DNA of 64,000 bases from Octopus sinensis (GCF_006345805.1 NW_021835141.1:1-64000), one strand, 5' to 3'. Counted from the stretch's first letter, positions 29,377 through 63,488 are shown. A program made the numbers and translations. The notes: generated by a model not told the origin, from the sequence alone.

Positions 29377-32300
29377 TCAATATTTACTGCACACAACGCA
29401 GGTTAATTCTTGACCATCGACATACGGTGGACATGGCAATGAACCACAAGCAGCCTGAACGAAATATAAAACAGCTCCATTTTCGTCTCTGTAACCTGCT
29501 GGATCAGCCTCTGATGCATAATCCACACACACATATTCTAGTCTGCCCTTTTCTGCATGAAGACTGGCCATCAAATATCCTGAATACTCAGCTGTCCAAC
29601 CAGGGTAACACTTTGTCCTGGCTGGTAACATCATAACAACAGCAGGTTGTCGTGTCAAACAGACACCACACGGAACATTGTGATCATGAAGTGATTTAGC
29701 GTTAGCAAAAGAAAAGAGTTTATTAGTTGGGTAATGACCTAATTCATATTCACTGCCATGAATGTAACCACATTTTTCAACTTCTGTCGTATAATTGGCC
29801 CAAATGGGGTCGTTAGGTAGACACAAGAGATTACTTCCACCACCAGTATGGGTAAAATGTTGTCCACCAACCACACCTAGGATTCGTAAGAATAAATCAA
29901 GAAAATAAGATATTAAGCAAAATTAAATATGAAATAACGGAAACATTCATTACAGTTTGACCCTTAAAAGAAGTCATGTTTAGTCACGTGTGAACGAATT
30001 GTGGTGTATGTGTTAGTGTTATATATTTGTGTCTTTGTGTTTGTGTCTTTGTGTTTATGTCTGTGTGTGTGCGGGTAAGTATTTGTGGTTGTGATGTGTA
30101 TTGCATGGGTTAGATGTTTGTGTGTGGATGTCAATAAACGGAGAAAGGAAAGGGATTTTGTGACGCATGTGGTTGTGATTTCCCGAAATGGAAAAGATGT
30201 CGTTCACTCTTTAAGGGGAAAATTGTTGGTGATGGGAATTGCATGTGGTTTGAGTAGAACAATACGAGAGACGGCGAGATGCAGAGAACTGGTGGGTAAG
30301 AGGGGATGAAATACTGTTTAGTCGACCATATGGGTGTGGCTAGCTATATCCATCGGTTTGTCTCGGACGAGTCAGGCCAACCACGAGACGGGCCTACCAC
30401 ATACTATAATATTATGATCACACAGATTTTATTTCATACAAAGCATGAACTGAGATGGGGTTAATTTTGAAGCTCATTGATGGCGTAGTGTTTAAGAAGA
30501 ATGGACAGCGATTTCGGCGACCGATAAAGGACATGTGTAGGGTTTATAGGGAGCAGATTCACAAAGGATGCGAGTTTGCTTGGAGATGTGGGAAGCAGTA
30601 GCTTTGAATTGGATGTGCCGTTGTTACATTACAAAGATATACTGGACAATTAATGAGAGGAGGTGGCGCATGAAAACAGAAAGGTTTGAGGGATAGGACG
30701 ATTTCGGTAAGGCGGAGAAGAATAGAAGTGCAATATGTACTCACTTGGGCTCTCTCAGTGGTACTTAGTCCCTCCATATTTTGCATAATACATACGGCCC
30801 TTAGTTAGCTTTGTCCATTAGTTACAGTGTATGGTTTTTCCAGTCCACATTGTACATTCTGCGTTCATTTCATTAACCATATACATTCATTCATCAGTTC
30901 TAAGAGACCTTGTTCAATTTAGTCTATAACAACAATCAATAGGCACTCTAGTTAATGTTAGTCAAGCTGCCATTCTTCACCTGTGGTCACACTCGTACAA
31001 AACCACCATCCGTAGCCAGTACAATGTATAACCAATTCGCAGGTTTGGTATTTGATATCTAGACTCAGCCTGAATTTCTTGATCGCTATACTGGATTCCA
31101 GTCTAGTCCCTATCTATAACTTAACATAGAGATATCTATATTCTGTGATTAGACAACATCCTTTTCACCTGGTCCATAGTAGACAACATTTAAATTCTGA
31201 TTTGACAAAATACCTACAAAGGTGTGAGCAGTCTTGTGCAGTCTCTATAGGGTCTATATGTATCGTTGCAAACGTGATATGTCACATGATTTGCTTGAGT
31301 GTGCGTGAGAGAAACTGAAAGAGAGGGGCGACAGAAAGAGAAAATGAGAGGAATAAAAGGAGAAGAAGAGAAAGATAAAGAGAGAAAGAGTGAACAGAAG
31401 TATAGTTTATACTAACCGTCATATACAAGGTTTGAATTAGGAGGACAACTTGTTCTGCCCCACCGGGTATACAATGATCCGAGACCGGGTTCTGTGAAAT
31501 TTAAAATGAAACAATTTAGTTTAAAAGAAAGAATTCTTGAATCCTATACAAAGGAAGTTGTTGGCTTGGAAGGAATTGATAGAGAGGAGAGAAATTTAGA
31601 ATTTAAGAGAAAAAGAATGAGTGAATGAATGAAAATCAGAATGAAAGAAGTAAATGATTCGCTAAGAATAAATTTTAAACGAAGAAAATTAGTCATTTGT
31701 CTATTGAGCCTGTTGTTGACGTTGATGTCAACGAATTGAGAGATTAATCTCAGAATATCAGAATGTGTATTTGACTCCCTTAAGAACGGATGTTTGTTTT
31801 GTAGTTGAACTTGGATGTGAATATATATATATATATTTGTGACCGTAATAATGATAAAGTTCTTCTTTTATAGATATGTGGGCCATATTATCAATTCTTG
31901 GCACCTGATTGGTCAATTACAAATATCAGCTTGGTGTTTGGTGCGAAGAGATCCGTTTCCTGCCTGAAGACTAGTATGGCCACCCATTAAGGTGTGTGAC
32001 GCCATTCCACTCAATCAATACTTCTTGCGGTTATCAAAGTGTGCACGGAAGTCTCCTTGTAAGACAAATGACTTTACCCCAAATATATCCAAAGCTGCAG
32101 TGACTTTGTTAAGGAAGCATTTGTATTTGGCCTCGCTATTGGGTGCATTTACTTCCAGCAGCTACACCACTCCTTCATTCTGCTTGAGCTTCAGGAGGTA
32201 TCCTTTAATACCTAGTGGGATTCACTCCATAATCCAATCCGAAAGCCAGGGATTGTGAGCATCCCACTTCCGCTTGTGCTGACATAGTTGGAACCACACC

Positions 32301-35300
32301 TGCACGGTGGAGTTTCCAACCTACTTCCAAGTGTACGCCTCCGAAATAATGAAGCCATCTTGAGGAGACACCGACATAGCGTTTTGTATCGTCCGGTTTT
32401 GACAGTCTAATTCTCAATTATGAACGGTTGATCCCTTCTGGAACTGCTTCGGGGTTCCTGAACACGCATATTTTGTATTCCGTCCCCATGCATCTAAGAT
32501 TGAGTTGGGTGGAGACTGCAGTATATTTCCCGAATGGACTCCTCCACTCGAGATCCAGACGCAACGGCTTTTATCCCACTCGATGGATGACGCGGTATGG
32601 CTATTCCCTGAAGCCCTTAGCGCACTGTAAGTATATGCAGCAAACAGCGAGGTCAAATACAAATCCTTCCAAAGCAAATTCACCTCAGCTTTAGATATAT
32701 TTGTGGTAAAGTCATTTGTCCTGCAACGAGACTTCAGTGCACACCTTGGCACTGATAACCGTGAGTAGGATTGATTGGAAGGAATGTCGTCAGTGAACTT
32801 AATGGAGAGATCATAGCAGCCTTCTGTGCAGGATACACACTCTCCCCTCTATGGTATAGATATTATTTTAAGACAGGGATATTTATAAGGGTACCTGGTA
32901 TAGAAATACATGGTGACAGAAGTTTTTGATAGAGTTTGGTCATCTTTCACTCTTTGCTGAACGTTCGGGTAAAAGGAAGGGGCGGAGGTCTCAACTCGTC
33001 ACTACCTAAATGTCAGAAAACCTGAAAATTCCTACAGTCTGCCGAACACTGGAAATTGGTAAGTCCAGTGCAACCTACAGAATACAATTGGAAGCCGCAG
33101 TGGATGCTGGGATCAGAAACAAATATGTGGAGACTTTTGCATCCAAATTGAGAGTGACCCTCCTGAATGAAGTTGGACATCGAAATGGATTCGTGATTGT
33201 ATTATTATTTCCGTCAGGTTCTTCTTCGGTTGAACGCTTATTTGAGCAAAACTCACTTAAAAGTGATAAAGCTGCTGGTGAAAAGCACGTTCGGCTTGAT
33301 ATTTTAGAAACCTTAAATACAGATGGTATTCTCTGAGTGACCCATGTATGCTAGGTGGATGGGACCTCTGGAAAAAACACCAAGGCAATGGTAATATGGG
33401 GTGACAATCACAATGTTTTCAAACAGAGACCAAAGAGAGTGTTCTAATTATAGAAAAGTCTACACTAGATGTCAGGAAAAGATATGTAGGGAAATTGTCG
33501 TGCCCAAGATTACTGTCAGGGACGCAGTACACCCGACCAGATAGTCGTTCAAAGACAGATCTTCCAGCAAACGTTGAAGCATTTCCAAGAGGAATACGCT
33601 TTAAACCACGAAAAGGCATACGATCACGTGCCCTGGGCATGTTGTGGATGGTTTACCAGGAAGGTGAGTTTAATGGGCAAATACAGGTTGCCATAAAGAA
33701 CTTATATGTATGTTCAAATTATTGTATTTATGTAAAAGTCGAAAGTTTTCAACGTGAAGGTTTCACTTAGTTGAAGTGTGCATTGTTAGTGCCCCTTCTC
33801 ACATTCTTTTTTGTGATCTGGTTGAATATGCGCAGCCATTGTGGTAGAGGTATCTCAATTCATCTCTACGTGATCGGGCGACTGTTATTTGTAGACGTCA
33901 TGCTGCTACCTGATTCGTCTGATGGTCACCAACAACGTGCACTGAATGGGTTGGCTGCAAGGTACCCCAAGGCAGGATTGACAAATACGCATTGTGTAGG
34001 AAAGTGGAACATCAATATTGCGGGTCTATGTTCACGAATGATTGGAAGCACAAGAGTGGACAGAATGCTGAATTGTAGATATAAACGCAGTGAAGCGCCA
34101 GCTCGGGCATTTGATTCTCAGATGAAGAGGGCATTCCATACTTATCGTATGCAAGCCGGCGGGGCTCGCTCTGAGCACTCCAATTTTTTCACTCGGCGAA
34201 GAGTACACTCGGAGGATACTTGCGGGCCGAAATAATTCTCGACGTAGCACTGCATATGTACTCATATACACACAATAAATGGCATAGTATATTAAAGTAA
34301 CATTTTATTAAGGAAATTATTGTAAAGTAGAACATGTTTCGAAATAAATTCAGGCAAATGTCTTAGTATATATTATTGTAGACATATAGATGGTAATGTG
34401 GAACTAATTCAAAGTTGGTGAAATTATAAATCATTAGTTAATGAGTCACGGGTAAAAGACTTTAGCAATAAAATTAGTTCTTACTTGGTGTGACATCAAG
34501 TTTATCGTCGAGAGATTTCTTAGAGATGAAACGGTTCTGTGAAAAAATAGAAATAGCATCATATAAATAGAACTTCAGGGTATTTATTATCGTTTAGAAC
34601 TTAAAACAATGCAATAGATGACAACATATTCGGACAGGTATCATTGCCAACACTACCATCTCAACGCCTTAGGAATCTTCTAGAAGGCGCTTCCATCCAG
34701 TCAAACGGCTTCTTGAACAATACCAAACAATACAACTCTGCATTTCAAATGACATCGTTTGGTGAAACTAAGAAGATAGATAAACATGAATTTACGACGA
34801 CGTCAAAGTTCAAGGGCAAGTCTATCCCCTCATTGGTTCTCTGGTACCCGCGAATGAACAACCACAGTTCCTCCAAATTTACTCTATGAATGATGTAGGA
34901 CAAGAAACCCGACGTGAGGTGTCAAAATTTCCGATGATGGGTCGTGTTAGACACACCGCACACTGCTGCAAAGGAGAGTATACCCACTGACAGTTTTTCG
35001 GTGCGTTCAAAAATCCCACAAACCCCACATCCAATTTTGTATGACATGTTAGGGCCTGAAACACTCCAAACAGACGCATAGCATGTTGCTTAGTCGAATT
35101 ATCCGAGCATTTACTCTACAAATGTTTTGATGTCAATGTTGCACTTTCCCATATCACATGTTTCAAAATGACTGGAATATATTATATACCAACTTTGCCA
35201 TTTGAATCCCCAGCAATGCCGGGTATGTCTGCTAGTACACACACACACACAGACACACCACACACAGACACACACACCACATATATATATATACACACAC

Positions 35301-62992: not shown

Positions 62993-63488
62993 TCAATATT
63001 TACTGCAGACAACGCAGGTTAATTCTTGACCTTCGACATACGGTGGGCATGGCAATGAGCCACAAACAGCCTCAACGAAATATAATAAAGCTCCATTTTC
63101 GTTTCGGTAACCCGCTGGATCAGCTTCTGGTGCATAATCCACACACACATATTCATGTCTGCCTTTATGACCATGACGCTCCGTCATCAAATATCCTGAA
63201 TACTCAGCTGTCCAACCAGCGTAACACTGTGTCCTGGCTGGTAACATCATAACAACAGCAGGTTGTCGTGTCAAACAGACAGCGCACGGAACGTTGTGAT
63301 CATGAAGTGATTTAGCGTTAGCAAAAGAAAAAGTTTATTTGAGTAGTGGGAAATTTCATATTCACTGCCATAAATGTAACCACCTTTTTCAACTTCAGTC
63401 GTATAATTGGCCCAAATGGGATCGTTAGGTAAACACAAGAGATTACTTCCGCCACCTGTGTGGTCAAAGAATTGTCCACCAACCACAC
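62993..63488 (-). CDS. Exon 4 of gene C (5' exons beyond the window); one 1 nt deletion in an A-run
   Basis: Acceptor ctAG at 63489; C4-like domain is open except for a single missing A in gcaaaagaaaaagttt (~63322-63337); 496 nt = 500-3-1. Confidence 0.75.

What the first reader, a model, noticed from the sequence alone, without database searches (positions are those of the whole stretch)
29377..63488. Hypervariable patches in the large exon among paralogs
A/B/C differ in clustered multi-residue blocks within an invariant scaffold: QHFTHT/QYYDHS/QFFDHT; TEVEKC/TGDKKS/TEVEKG; YELGHYP/YQLDLYP/YEISHYS; [33 protein letters not shown]. By hand count A and C differ at about 23 of ~166 residues. Exons 1-3 and the structural Cys motifs are almost unchanged. 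Aromatic- and His-rich variable patches suggest a diversifying binding surface, a candidate undescribed receptor/lectin-like repertoire.
Basis: partly seen in the sequence, partly recalled or inferred. Interest (0 to 1): 0.8.

Follow-up and report, generated by a model that had tools for sequence, protein, structure and literature searches.

The report
Octopus NC1-domain gene array, variable loops
The window holds a tandem array of octopus "short-chain collagen C4-like" genes whose copies differ mainly in a few surface loops that are reshuffled between copies; the pattern is real and looks like a recognition surface, but two of the three copies compared are broken and strong positive selection is not shown.

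Summary
The clustered differences are real, but the description needs correcting. All three large exons lie on the minus strand. Only copy A (29377-29876) is intact. Copy B has a +1 frameshift, a stop codon and a -1 frameshift. Copy C has a 1-nt deletion.

The genes belong to the annotated but uncharacterised "short-chain collagen C4-like" (spongin short-chain collagen-related) family. An AlphaFold model matches only collagen IV NC1 domains, so the fold is not a lectin fold. The octopus proteins have no Gly-X-Y collagen repeat. They carry a predicted N-terminal membrane anchor instead.

Across 25 large exons from four Octopus genomes, variation sits in the same loops. By weak homology mapping, these loops are the equatorial hairpins that in collagen IV govern trimer formation and head-to-head docking.

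Patch variants are shuffled between paralogs by recombination or gene conversion (PHI p<=0.001). Silent divergence is also about 2.2-fold higher in the patches.

Patch dN/dS is about 0.55-0.8 against local dS and 1.4-2 against scaffold dS. My site models support roughly 4-5% of codons at omega 3-4 (codons 37, 47, 88, 135; 46 and 142 depending on the model). Patches 1 and 5 sit near omega 1.

Verdict: a real paralog-specific recognition surface in a known family; diversifying selection is only partly supported.

The parts
29377..29876 (-). Gene A exon 4, the 'large exon'. Intact, about 166 codons plus stop. It encodes most of the NC1-like domain.
   Evidence: ORF; splice junctions and full CDS (771 nt, 256 aa); 96-97% nt identical to intact orthologs in O. 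vulgaris and O. sinensis.
31417..31491 (-). Gene A exon 3 (..[24 protein letters not shown].). It holds the start of the NC1-like domain and the first conserved Cys.
   Evidence: tblastn; AG/GT junctions.
34485..34536 (-). Gene A exon 2 ([17 protein letters not shown]), a short charged stalk.
40159..40302 (-). Gene A exon 1. It holds the start codon, a 14-residue N-terminus and a roughly 19-residue hydrophobic segment (predicted signal anchor).
   Evidence: Hydropathy is 2.1-2.7 over 19 residues starting at residue ~15 in homologs. AlphaFold predicts a helix at 16-50 in P0001.
29845..29862 (-). Patch 1 in A (QHFTHT, exon-4 codons 5-10). A loop after the first long strand, aligned to NC1 hairpin SM1.
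   Evidence: PMC6211539.
29764..29787 (-). Patch 2 in A (TEVEKCGY, codons 30-37). It includes an extra unpaired Cys35. Codon 37 is a candidate selected site.
29716..29748 (-). Patch 3 in A ([11 protein letters not shown], codons 43-53). A long loop that varies in length among paralogs. Codons 46 and 47 are candidate selected sites.
29539..29571 (-). Patch 5 in A ([11 protein letters not shown], codons 102-112). A beta-hairpin tip, aligned to NC1 hairpin SM1'.
   Evidence: PMC6211539.
43247..43746 (-). Copy B large exon, a pseudogene in this assembly. It has an extra A in the run 43641-43648, a TAA at 43333-43335 and a missing G next to 43324.
   Evidence: The O. sinensis counterpart L004:22623-23120 is intact and carries the same patch variants.
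45765..45842 (-). Exon 3 copy of unit B (intact).
48612..48662 (-). Exon 2 copy of unit B (NRVISKKSCDDKPDDTP).
62993..63488 (-). Copy C large exon. It is frameshifted by a 1-nt loss near 63332. Its upstream exons lie beyond the window end.
   Evidence: The O. sinensis counterpart L004:47286-47780 is intact.
13126..13296 (-). Degenerate fragment of a fourth large exon (copy D).
   Evidence: tblastn 54% identity over 57 residues; alignment.
20559..20702 (-). Exon 1 copy of a truncated unit 'Z'. No exon 3 or intact exon 4 follows it in the window.
   Evidence: 100% identical to the N-terminus of O. vulgaris P0008.
15302..15352 (-). Exon 2 copy of unit Z.
57451..57594 (-). Exon 1 copy of the unit upstream of B.
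52322..52372 (-). Exon 2 copy of the unit upstream of B.
50224..50352 (-). Possible alternative 5' exon (..SLLDLLCCPETVNIVLPSKT), used in some NCBI O. sinensis gene models.
   Evidence: tblastn with the P0004 N-terminus.

Best explanation
The window is part of a large tandem array, in an Octopus species close to O. vulgaris and O. sinensis, of 'short-chain collagen C4-like' genes. Each gene has four exons on the minus strand and encodes a protein of about 256 residues. The protein has a short N-terminus, one hydrophobic signal-anchor helix, a roughly 25-residue charged stalk and a 185-residue Cys-rich domain with the fold of the collagen IV NC1 domain. It has no collagen triple-helix repeat.

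Paralogs share an almost invariant beta-sheet scaffold with ten cysteines. They differ in five to seven short loops. By homology these loops are the hairpins and loops of the 'equatorial' face of NC1. In collagen IV that face clips three chains into a trimer and docks two trimers head to head.

Three processes create and keep the diversity: gene duplication, recombination or short-tract gene conversion that moves existing loop variants between paralogs, and gene death (B, C and the D fragment here). A few codons also evolve faster than neutral.

Inferred, not shown: the loops set the recognition specificity of the module. Most likely this means which paralogs assemble or dock with which. Less likely it means which external ligand is bound.
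For: Family: 406 homologs, the best named 'short-chain collagen C4-like' in Octopus.

Gene model: canonical splice sites and an intact 771-nt CDS for A.

Fold: AlphaFold mean pLDDT is 84.5. The 35 best PDB matches are all collagen IV NC1, with E down to 1.8e-5 and probability 1.0 for the top 27, falling to 0.57.

Spongin-type features: ten conserved Cys and no HSQ motif, as described for spongins in PMC5395295.

No collagen repeat and an N-terminal hydrophobic 19-mer. A conserved NYT sequon is present in all 21 intact copies.

Loops: all patches lie between predicted strands. Patch 5 aligns to NC1 146-155 (SM1' is 144-154) and patch 1 to NC1 39-44 (SM1 is 37-45). [quoted passage not shown]

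Family-wide concentration of variation in the same loops.

Mosaicism: PHI is 0.656 against 0.758+-0.016, p<=0.001. Patch 5 is nucleotide-identical in four genes that have different patches 1-3. One O. sinensis pair is 86%, 95% and 100% identical across thirds of the exon.

Birth and death: 4 of 25 large exons are disabled.

Selection: scaffold omega is about 0.2-0.3. Site models give 2dlnL of 23.8 and 18.3 for an omega 3-4 class, using segment trees.

Orthogroup A keeps its four patches. Two nonsynonymous changes are observed where 7.3 are expected if the patches were neutral, P about 0.02 (numbers).
Against: Sequence-level homology to NC1 is weak. hhalign gives E 3e-4 with 39% probability locally and 9% globally. 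No member hits Pfam C4. The mapping of patches 2, 3 and 7 onto NC1 elements is therefore uncertain.

No coordinates were available, so clustering of the loops on one surface was not measured. Trimerisation without a collagen helix is assumed from collagen IV NC1 behaviour, not tested. Membrane anchoring is a hydropathy and AlphaFold inference.

Omega near 1 at most patch sites is also what unconstrained loops would give.

The ortholog-conservation argument rests on one orthogroup. It weakens if neighbouring variable sites (codons 52, 56, 153) are counted.

No expression or binding data were available.
Confidence: 0.6

Rival explanations
1. One reading: a repertoire of lectin-like or immune-type receptors whose variable loops bind foreign ligands (microbes, glycans) and evolve under diversifying selection.
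For: Tandem expansion with birth and death. There is a predicted ectodomain on a membrane anchor with a conserved N-glycosylation sequon. A class of 4-5% of codons has omega 3-4. Silent divergence is also raised in the patches (29% vs 13% at four-fold sites), as seen where diversity is maintained against homogenisation. His- and acid-rich loops are present.
Against: The fold is NC1, not a lectin fold. The patches as blocks have dN/dS below 1 against local dS. Patches 1 and 5 lose their signal with local trees. Orthogroup A's patches are conserved across three species, which does not fit a continuing arms race. In the papers I could search the family appears only in gene and protein lists (structural/ECM, adhesion, growth, ink proteome), with no immune function tested.
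Confidence: 0.2
2. Relaxed constraint. The patches are flexible loops with little function that drift almost neutrally, while the scaffold is held by folding and disulfides. Their patchiness reflects only where the fold tolerates change.
For: Omega is about 0.8-1.1 at independently chosen hypervariable sites. Local dN/dS is 0.55-0.8. The same positions are the most variable across the whole metazoan family (Spearman 0.62). There are indels in patch 3. Patch dN (about 0.3-0.4) is similar to the divergence of non-coding flanks (0.14-0.34 raw).
Against: Site models reject 'neutral plus constrained only' (2dlnL 18-24 with segment trees). Orthogroup A's four patches show 2 changes where 7.3 are expected under neutrality. 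Four-fold silent divergence is 2.2 times higher in the patches, which uniform drift with uniform gene conversion does not predict. Patch composition is strongly non-random, with His enriched eight-fold.
Confidence: 0.17
3. Artefact of pseudogene decay. Because B and C are broken, the A/B/C differences are just neutral decay of dead copies.
For: B carries three disabling lesions and C one.
Against: The intact O. sinensis counterparts of B and C carry the same patch variants. B matches in patches 1, 2, 3 and 5, and C in patches 1-3, apart from single-residue differences. The same patch pattern is seen among 21 intact genes. B is 95-99.5% identical to its intact counterpart.
Confidence: 0.03

Closest known systems
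[quoted passage not shown]
   Same: There is clear sequence homology, and database names for the closest hits say so. The C-terminal domain is NC1-like with ten conserved cysteines and no HSQ motif (PMC5395295). The distribution covers cnidarians, lophotrochozoans and amphioxus.
   Different: The defining short collagenous Gly-X-Y domain is absent from all octopod members and most other hits. Only 4 of 74 have a Pfam collagen match. An N-terminal hydrophobic anchor and a short charged stalk take its place. The octopus-specific tandem expansion with shuffled hypervariable loops was not found described in the searchable literature.
Collagen IV NC1 domain (PDB 1m3d, 1li1, 1t60, 5nax, 8tys)
   Same: It is the only fold family matched. 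Both have two pseudo-repeated subdomains. The C..CAVC and C-terminal C..C motifs align. NC1 is a recognition module that selects chains and docks protomers through flexible equatorial hairpins (PMC5395295, PMC6211539). The octopus variable patches align to those hairpins.
   Different: Identity is 13-19% and TM-score only 0.32-0.43. The octopus domain has ten rather than twelve Cys, no HSQ, a shorter domain, no long triple helix and no 7S domain. Conservation of Met93/Lys211 and the chloride motifs was not assessed.
Ctenophore NC1-only genes (PMC5395295)
   Same: They are a precedent for an NC1 domain encoded without any collagenous part.
   Different: They are closer to true collagen IV NC1 (HSQ retained). 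They are not reported as membrane-anchored or as a diversified tandem family.
Tandemly expanded recognition families of molluscs, e.g. bivalve C1q-domain proteins (PMC6835236)
   Same: This is an analogy only: tandem duplication, a compact (probably trimeric) C-terminal beta-rich head, and variation focused in loops.
   Different: The fold is unrelated. C1qDC proteins are mostly secreted and have experimental evidence of microbe binding. There is none here.
Type II transmembrane proteins with trimeric C-terminal heads (membrane collagens XIII/XVII/XXIII/XXV, TNF-family ligands) - from general knowledge
   Same: The predicted topology is the same: an N-terminal signal anchor, a stalk, and a C-terminal domain expected to trimerise.
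   Different: There is no sequence or fold relationship. Topology and trimerisation are not tested here.

Membership tests
Spongin short-chain collagen-related / 'short-chain collagen C4-like' family | Significant sequence similarity to proteins of the family | tested here: met
   406 hits at E<=1e-5. The best are 79-85% identical (E about 1e-92) and named short-chain collagen C4-like (O. sinensis, O. vulgaris, O. bimaculoides). Bivalve, annelid, coral and amphioxus members are 45-55% identical.
Spongin short-chain collagen-related / 'short-chain collagen C4-like' family | NC1-type C-terminal domain with ten conserved cysteines (seven shared with collagen IV, three spongin-specific) and no HSQ motif (PMC5395295) | tested here: met
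   Ten invariant or near-invariant Cys are present in the 74-sequence alignment (C81, C109, C160, C163, C180, C207, C234, C239, C250, C253 of gene A). 'RWGR' and 'LPAR' stand where collagen IV has HSQ. Which seven are the shared ones was not checked one by one.
Spongin short-chain collagen-related / 'short-chain collagen C4-like' family | Short collagenous (Gly-X-Y) domain N-terminal to the NC1 domain | tested here: not met
   There are no Gly-X-Y runs of 3 or more in the octopod full-length proteins (one trivial run of 3 in P0008). Runs of 8-19 occur only in amphioxus and coral members. The Pfam collagen model matches 4 of 74 members.
Collagen IV NC1 (C4 domain) superfamily | NC1 fold | tested here: met
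   The AlphaFold model has pLDDT 84.5. The Foldseek top 35 PDB hits are all collagen IV NC1, E 1.8e-5 to 0.2; probability is 1.0 for the top 27 and falls to 0.57. TM-scores are low (0.32-0.43).
Collagen IV NC1 (C4 domain) superfamily | Match to the Pfam C4 model (PF01413) or sequence-level match to solved NC1 chains | tested here: not met
   There are no Pfam hits for exon 4 or for any of the 74 members. There is no phmmer or profile hit in PDB sequences. hhalign gives only E 3e-4 at 39% probability over 47 columns.
Collagen IV proper | Long interrupted triple helix, 7S domain, twelve-Cys NC1 with two HSQ motifs | tested here: not met
   The protein is 256 aa with no Gly-X-Y, ten Cys and no HSQ.
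   For the patch blocks, omega is 0.55-0.8 against local dS and 1.4-2.1 against scaffold dS. It is 1.12 at 18 independently chosen sites. M2a beats M1a with segment trees (2dlnL 23.8, or 18.3 with a separate patch rate). About 4-5% of codons have omega 3.3-3.9: sites 37, 47, 88, 135, plus 46 and 142 depending on the model. These come from my own simplified implementation with fixed NJ trees, and recombination is present.
   All patches lie in loops. By alignment they map to the equatorial-layer elements of NC1 (PMC6211539). No model coordinates were available to measure this, and the alignment of patches 2, 3 and 7 is weak.
   The only fold match is NC1. There is no lectin Pfam family.
Type II membrane protein | Single N-terminal signal-anchor helix with the C-terminus outside the cell | tested here: inconclusive
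   Hydropathy is 2.1-2.7 over 19 residues from residue ~15 in most full-length octopod members. AlphaFold predicts a helix at 16-50. An NYT sequon is conserved in the domain. No dedicated topology predictor or experiment was available.

The most novel reading that the evidence does not exclude
Octopuses have converted the collagen-IV-type NC1 trimerisation and docking module into a membrane-anchored, collagen-less gene family. Its equatorial recognition loops are diversified and recombined between tandem paralogs. The result would be a combinatorial recognition code, either cell-cell (or self-assembly) specificity or pattern recognition, built on a fold not previously known to serve that role.
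Probability: 0.25. Interest if true: 0.8.

Novelty: new variant of a known kind. Interest (0 to 1): 0.5.

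Why it matters
NC1 domains are known as the modules that decide which collagen IV chains assemble and how networks dock. Here the same fold appears without any collagen, on a predicted membrane anchor. It is multiplied into dozens of tandem copies on one octopus chromosome, and almost all variation falls in the loops that do the recognising in collagen IV.

If those loops set partner or ligand specificity, this would be a new kind of recognition family in cephalopods, animals already noted for expanded protocadherins. It would also be a tractable system for studying how gene conversion shuffles specificity loops.

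If the loops are merely unconstrained, the array is an ordinary birth-and-death gene family. Either way, the family's name ('collagen') is misleading for these proteins.

Tried and rejected
- Pfam scans of exon 4 and of 74 family members found no C4 or lectin family.
- Sequence and profile searches of PDB found nothing. Only the fold search linked the domain to NC1.
I modelled the O. vulgaris homolog P0001 instead; it is 85% identical and the same length in the domain.
- The idea that the window is O. vulgaris or O. sinensis itself is rejected. Orthologous stretches are only 93-95% identical, and the A-ortholog dS is 0.08-0.10 against 0.03 between those two species.
- Whole-exon dN/dS (0.36-0.53) is uninformative for the question.
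- I suspected that the raised synonymous divergence in the patches was an artefact of Nei-Gojobori pathway averaging. Four-fold sites with identical first two bases show the same 2.2-fold excess, so I rejected that.
- Single-tree site tests give very strong signals (2dlnL 105). I discount them because recombination is demonstrable.
- Literature searches for the family in cephalopods, or for its expansion, found only list entries. Aouacheria 2006 is not held.
- No parametric bootstrap of my site-model test was run, because of run time.

Full report
WHAT IS IN THE WINDOW. The window is AT-rich animal DNA full of microsatellites and consists of diverged segmental duplications of about 14-20 kb. 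A tblastn search with the intact copy finds three full copies of the large exon and one fragment:
- A at 29377-29874
- B at about 43250-43744
- C at 62996-63486
- D, a degenerate fragment, at 13126-13296

The closest database proteins are Octopus vulgaris, O. sinensis and O. bimaculoides proteins named 'short-chain collagen C4-like'. There are 406 hits in all, reaching Argonauta, bivalves, annelids, a coral and amphioxus.

THE SOURCE SPECIES. Orthologous stretches fetched from O. vulgaris (L001, L002, L010) and O. sinensis (L003, L004, L007-L009) are 93-95% identical to the window. The ortholog of A differs at dS of about 0.08-0.10 from both species, while those two differ from each other by about 0.03. 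The window therefore comes from a third, closely related Octopus species.

CHECK OF THE OBSERVATION. The clustered differences exist. The variable residues are clustered (permutation p=0.006). Two things were missed.
- B is disabled three times: an extra A in an A8 run (43641-43648), a TAT-to-TAA change (43333-43335) and a missing G next to 43324. 'TGDKKS' is therefore not encoded as written.
- C has a 1-nt loss near 63332, in addition to a one-codon deletion that it shares with its intact O. sinensis counterpart.

The homopolymer indels could be assembly errors. The nonsense substitution in B argues for real decay. Only A is demonstrably intact.

GENE MODEL OF A. All junctions are canonical GT/AG and the CDS is 771 nt, or 256 aa. 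The exons are:
- exon 1: 40302-40159
- exon 2: 34536-34485
- exon 3: 31491-31417
- exon 4: 29876-29377

Exon 3 of C is outside the window. Extra orphan copies of exons 1 and 2 show that the units are partly rearranged.

THE DIFFERENCES ARE NOT PSEUDOGENE DECAY. The intact O. sinensis counterparts of B and C carry essentially the same patch variants, B in patches 1, 2, 3 and 5 and C in patches 1-3, apart from single-residue differences.

WHAT THE PROTEIN IS. Pfam and PDB sequence searches are silent. An AlphaFold model of the O. vulgaris homolog P0001 (85% identical, same domain length) is confident, with mean pLDDT 84.5. It shows a long N-terminal helix at residues 16-50 and a beta-rich domain at 71-254. 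Foldseek against the PDB returns collagen IV NC1 domains as its 35 best matches. E-values reach 1.8e-5 and probability is 1.0 for the top 27, although TM-scores are low at 0.32-0.43.

The family has ten conserved cysteines and no HSQ motif. That is what Fidler et al. (PMC5395295) describe for spongin short-chain collagens: seven cysteines shared with collagen IV, three of their own, and HSQ absent.

The defining short collagenous domain is missing. Octopod members have no Gly-X-Y runs. Only 4 of 74 aligned members, from amphioxus and coral, match the Pfam collagen model. In its place, exon 1 encodes a 14-residue N-terminus followed by a roughly 19-residue hydrophobic segment (Kyte-Doolittle 2.1-2.7). 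Exons 2-3 encode a short charged stalk. An NYT sequon is conserved in the domain of all 21 intact copies.

I infer, but have not shown, a type II membrane protein that displays an NC1-like head. Many non-cephalopod lophotrochozoan members have the same collagen-less, hydrophobic N-terminus layout.

THE PATCHES ARE A FAMILY-WIDE FEATURE. Among 29 octopod proteins at 68% identity or more, entropy is concentrated at these exon-4 codons: 5-10, 30-37, 44-53, 88/91/94-95, 103-108 plus 112, 140-142 and 153-155. There it reaches the level seen across the whole metazoan family, while the scaffold is invariant.

I collected 25 large exons from four genomes. Of these, 21 are intact and 4 are disabled: B and C here, one in O. 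vulgaris and one in O. sinensis. The patches have 18-21 distinct variants among the 25. In the model every patch lies in a loop between strands. The variable positions are eight-fold enriched in His and two-fold in Asp/Glu, but not in aromatic residues.

WHERE THE PATCHES SIT, BY HOMOLOGY. Profile alignment to collagen IV NC1 is weak but consistent with the fold match. I verified my NC1 sequence residue by residue against PDB chains. The mapping is:
- The stretch '..VPCAVC..P..C..GW..EYSGYLM' aligns to '..RCAVCE..IPPCPSGWSSLWIGYSFVM'.
- Patch 5 falls on NC1 residues 146-155.
- By the internal repeat, and in the global alignment, patch 1 falls on residues 39-44.
- With low confidence, patches 2, 3 and 7 align to the loop beta7-beta8 (chloride motif) region, the loop beta8-beta9 (SM3, Met93) and SM3' (Lys211).

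Casino et al. (PMC6211539) define SM1 (residues 37-45) and SM1' (144-154) as the hairpins that line the central tunnel of the trimer. They state that SM1, SM1' and SM2 are key determinants of protomer formation. They also state that all six SM elements and the adjoining loops form the equatorial layer that glues two protomers front to front, while sheets I/I' are the stable core.

So the octopus scaffold corresponds to the NC1 core, and the variable patches correspond to its recognition face. I could not measure this on coordinates, because none are returned by the tools.

HOW THE DIVERSITY ARISES. Patch variants recur in different combinations. Patch 5 'TEYYKHKGRH' is nucleotide-identical in four genes whose patches 1-3 differ. 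'[10 protein letters not shown]', including a silent CAC variant, occurs in the O. sinensis A ortholog and in an unrelated paralog. The nearest neighbour of a gene changes from one third of the exon to the next. One O. sinensis pair 12 kb apart is 86%, 95% and 100% identical over codons 1-41, 42-100 and 101-165. Window C and its positional counterpart show the opposite gradient, at 97.6%, 94.2% and 87.7%. The pairwise homoplasy index is 0.656 against 0.758+-0.016 in permutations, p<=0.001, also within O. sinensis alone. Recombination or gene conversion therefore shuffles the loops, on top of duplication and gene death.

SELECTION. Whole-exon dN/dS is 0.36-0.53. The results for the patches depend on the denominator:
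Scaffold dS is 0.23 but patch dS is 0.74.
- Counting changes on trees gives a patch nonsynonymous rate 1.4-1.7 times the scaffold synonymous rate. Against the local synonymous rate it is only 0.73-0.80 times.
- The local excess of silent change is real. At four-fold sites with identical first two bases, 29% differ in patches against 12.9% in the scaffold.
- That fits loop segments with older genealogies than the homogenised scaffold. It does not by itself show omega above 1.
- Sites chosen independently, as those with seven or more residue types in more distant octopod proteins, have omega 1.12 in the main clade. Looser sets give about 0.8.

I also wrote a simplified M1a/M2a codon likelihood with fixed NJ trees and F3x4 frequencies:
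- With one tree, 2dlnL is 105.5. This is inflated by recombination.
- With six segment-specific trees it is 23.8 (p about 7e-6). The fit gives 3.8% of codons at omega 3.9, 35% at omega 1 and 61% at omega 0.07.
- With an additional separate rate for the patch codons it is 18.3 (p=1e-4).
- Codons 37, 47, 88 and 135 have a posterior above 0.5 under both segment-tree models (37 and 88 reach only 0.76-0.8 in one of them). Codons 46 and 142 are supported by one model each.
- Codons 6, 8, 104, 107 and 112, in patches 1 and 5, are supported only under the single tree.

Within orthogroup A (window, O. vulgaris, O. sinensis) the four patches show about 2 nonsynonymous changes. Under neutrality 7.3 would be expected (P about 0.02). 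That gives omega 0.27 against 0.22 for the scaffold (numbers). This is one orthogroup, and nearby variable sites did change.

Taken together, most loop positions evolve near neutrality between paralogs, and a handful probably evolve faster. At least one paralog's loops are then conserved between species.

INTERPRETATION. The anatomy and the evolutionary mode are well supported. The function is inferred. The fold's known job is recognition in assembly, the variable loops align to the parts that do it, and paralog-specific loops are kept in an orthogroup. I therefore favour loops that set recognition specificity, most likely which paralogs trimerise or dock head to head, possibly between cells. 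I rate this about 0.6 including the descriptive part. An immune or lectin-like ligand repertoire (0.2) and simple relaxed constraint (0.17) remain open. Pseudogene decay as the cause is essentially excluded (0.03).

NOVELTY. The genes are annotated and the family is known, so this is not an undescribed family. I could not find the following described in the searchable literature: the collagen-less, anchor-bearing architecture combined with a large octopus tandem expansion; the concentration of variation in the NC1 recognition loops; and their reshuffling between copies. I rate it a new variant of a known kind, of moderate interest.

Noticed in passing
window 1-~10000 (+): There is a GC-rich block (0.50-0.64) of ribosomal DNA. 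A eukaryotic LSU rRNA match is reported over 1-4250 (model positions 403-3401, 1026 bits), and a full-length 5.8S rRNA lies at 8601-8759. It sits where exons 3-4 of the truncated gene unit 'Z' would be expected. It could be a real rDNA fragment insertion or an assembly chimera; this was not resolved.
   Followed up: partly
window ~24356-27552 (-): A degenerate retroelement with frameshifted ORFs. It carries a reverse-transcriptase motif (..KPADKGGAVVVW..) and a GIY-YIG-like motif (..YIGQTGRRL..EH..), which suggests a Penelope-like element. The region also has strong GC skew.
   Followed up: no
window 1-338, 20751-21090, 40351-40690, 57643-57982: The sequence just upstream of exon 1 (promoter and 5'UTR side of the minus-strand genes) is 94-97% identical among four copies. 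That is clearly more conserved than the rest of the units (76-93%). The copy at 1-338 implies that a further gene unit begins just left of the window.
   Followed up: partly
window 14681-14794, 33506-33619, 47614-47718, 51443-51555 (-): A repeated ORF-like element (MPFRGLQ..GRVYC..) lies inside intron 2 of each unit. NCBI's O. sinensis model P0004 uses it as an N-terminus without a hydrophobic anchor. It could be an alternative first exon, a repeat, or a mis-annotation. The copy at 51443-51555 is frameshifted.
   Followed up: no
window 29770-29772 (codon 35 of A exon 4): Gene A, its orthologs and two other paralogs carry an eleventh, unpaired cysteine inside variable patch 2 (EVEKCGY). It could be a free thiol or form an intermolecular disulfide.
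   Followed up: no
exon-4 variable positions in all copies: Variable loop positions are 12.4% His (scaffold 1.6%) and 18% Asp/Glu (scaffold 8%). This hints at metal-ion- or pH-dependent interactions.
   Followed up: partly
window 31947-32621 vs 46314-47007: A roughly 690-bp segment between exons 2 and 3 is inverted in unit B relative to unit A (90% identity in reverse orientation).
   Followed up: no
window 39142-39831: A local tandem duplication of about 311 bp (copies 98-100% identical) lies in intron 1 of gene A.
   Followed up: no
window units B (40-50 kb) and C (60.8-64 kb) vs L004 16-26 kb and 47-50 kb: The relative order of the B-like and C-like units differs between the window (C, B, A along the gene strand) and O. 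sinensis (B, one extra gene, C, A). This indicates structural rearrangement or copy-number change in the array between close species.
   Followed up: partly
window 13990-14800, 21200-21820, 40660-41570, 58330-61080: Long compound microsatellites give spurious long ORFs: (TATG/CATA)-type repeats reading as YIHT or CMYV, and (TG)n.
   Followed up: no
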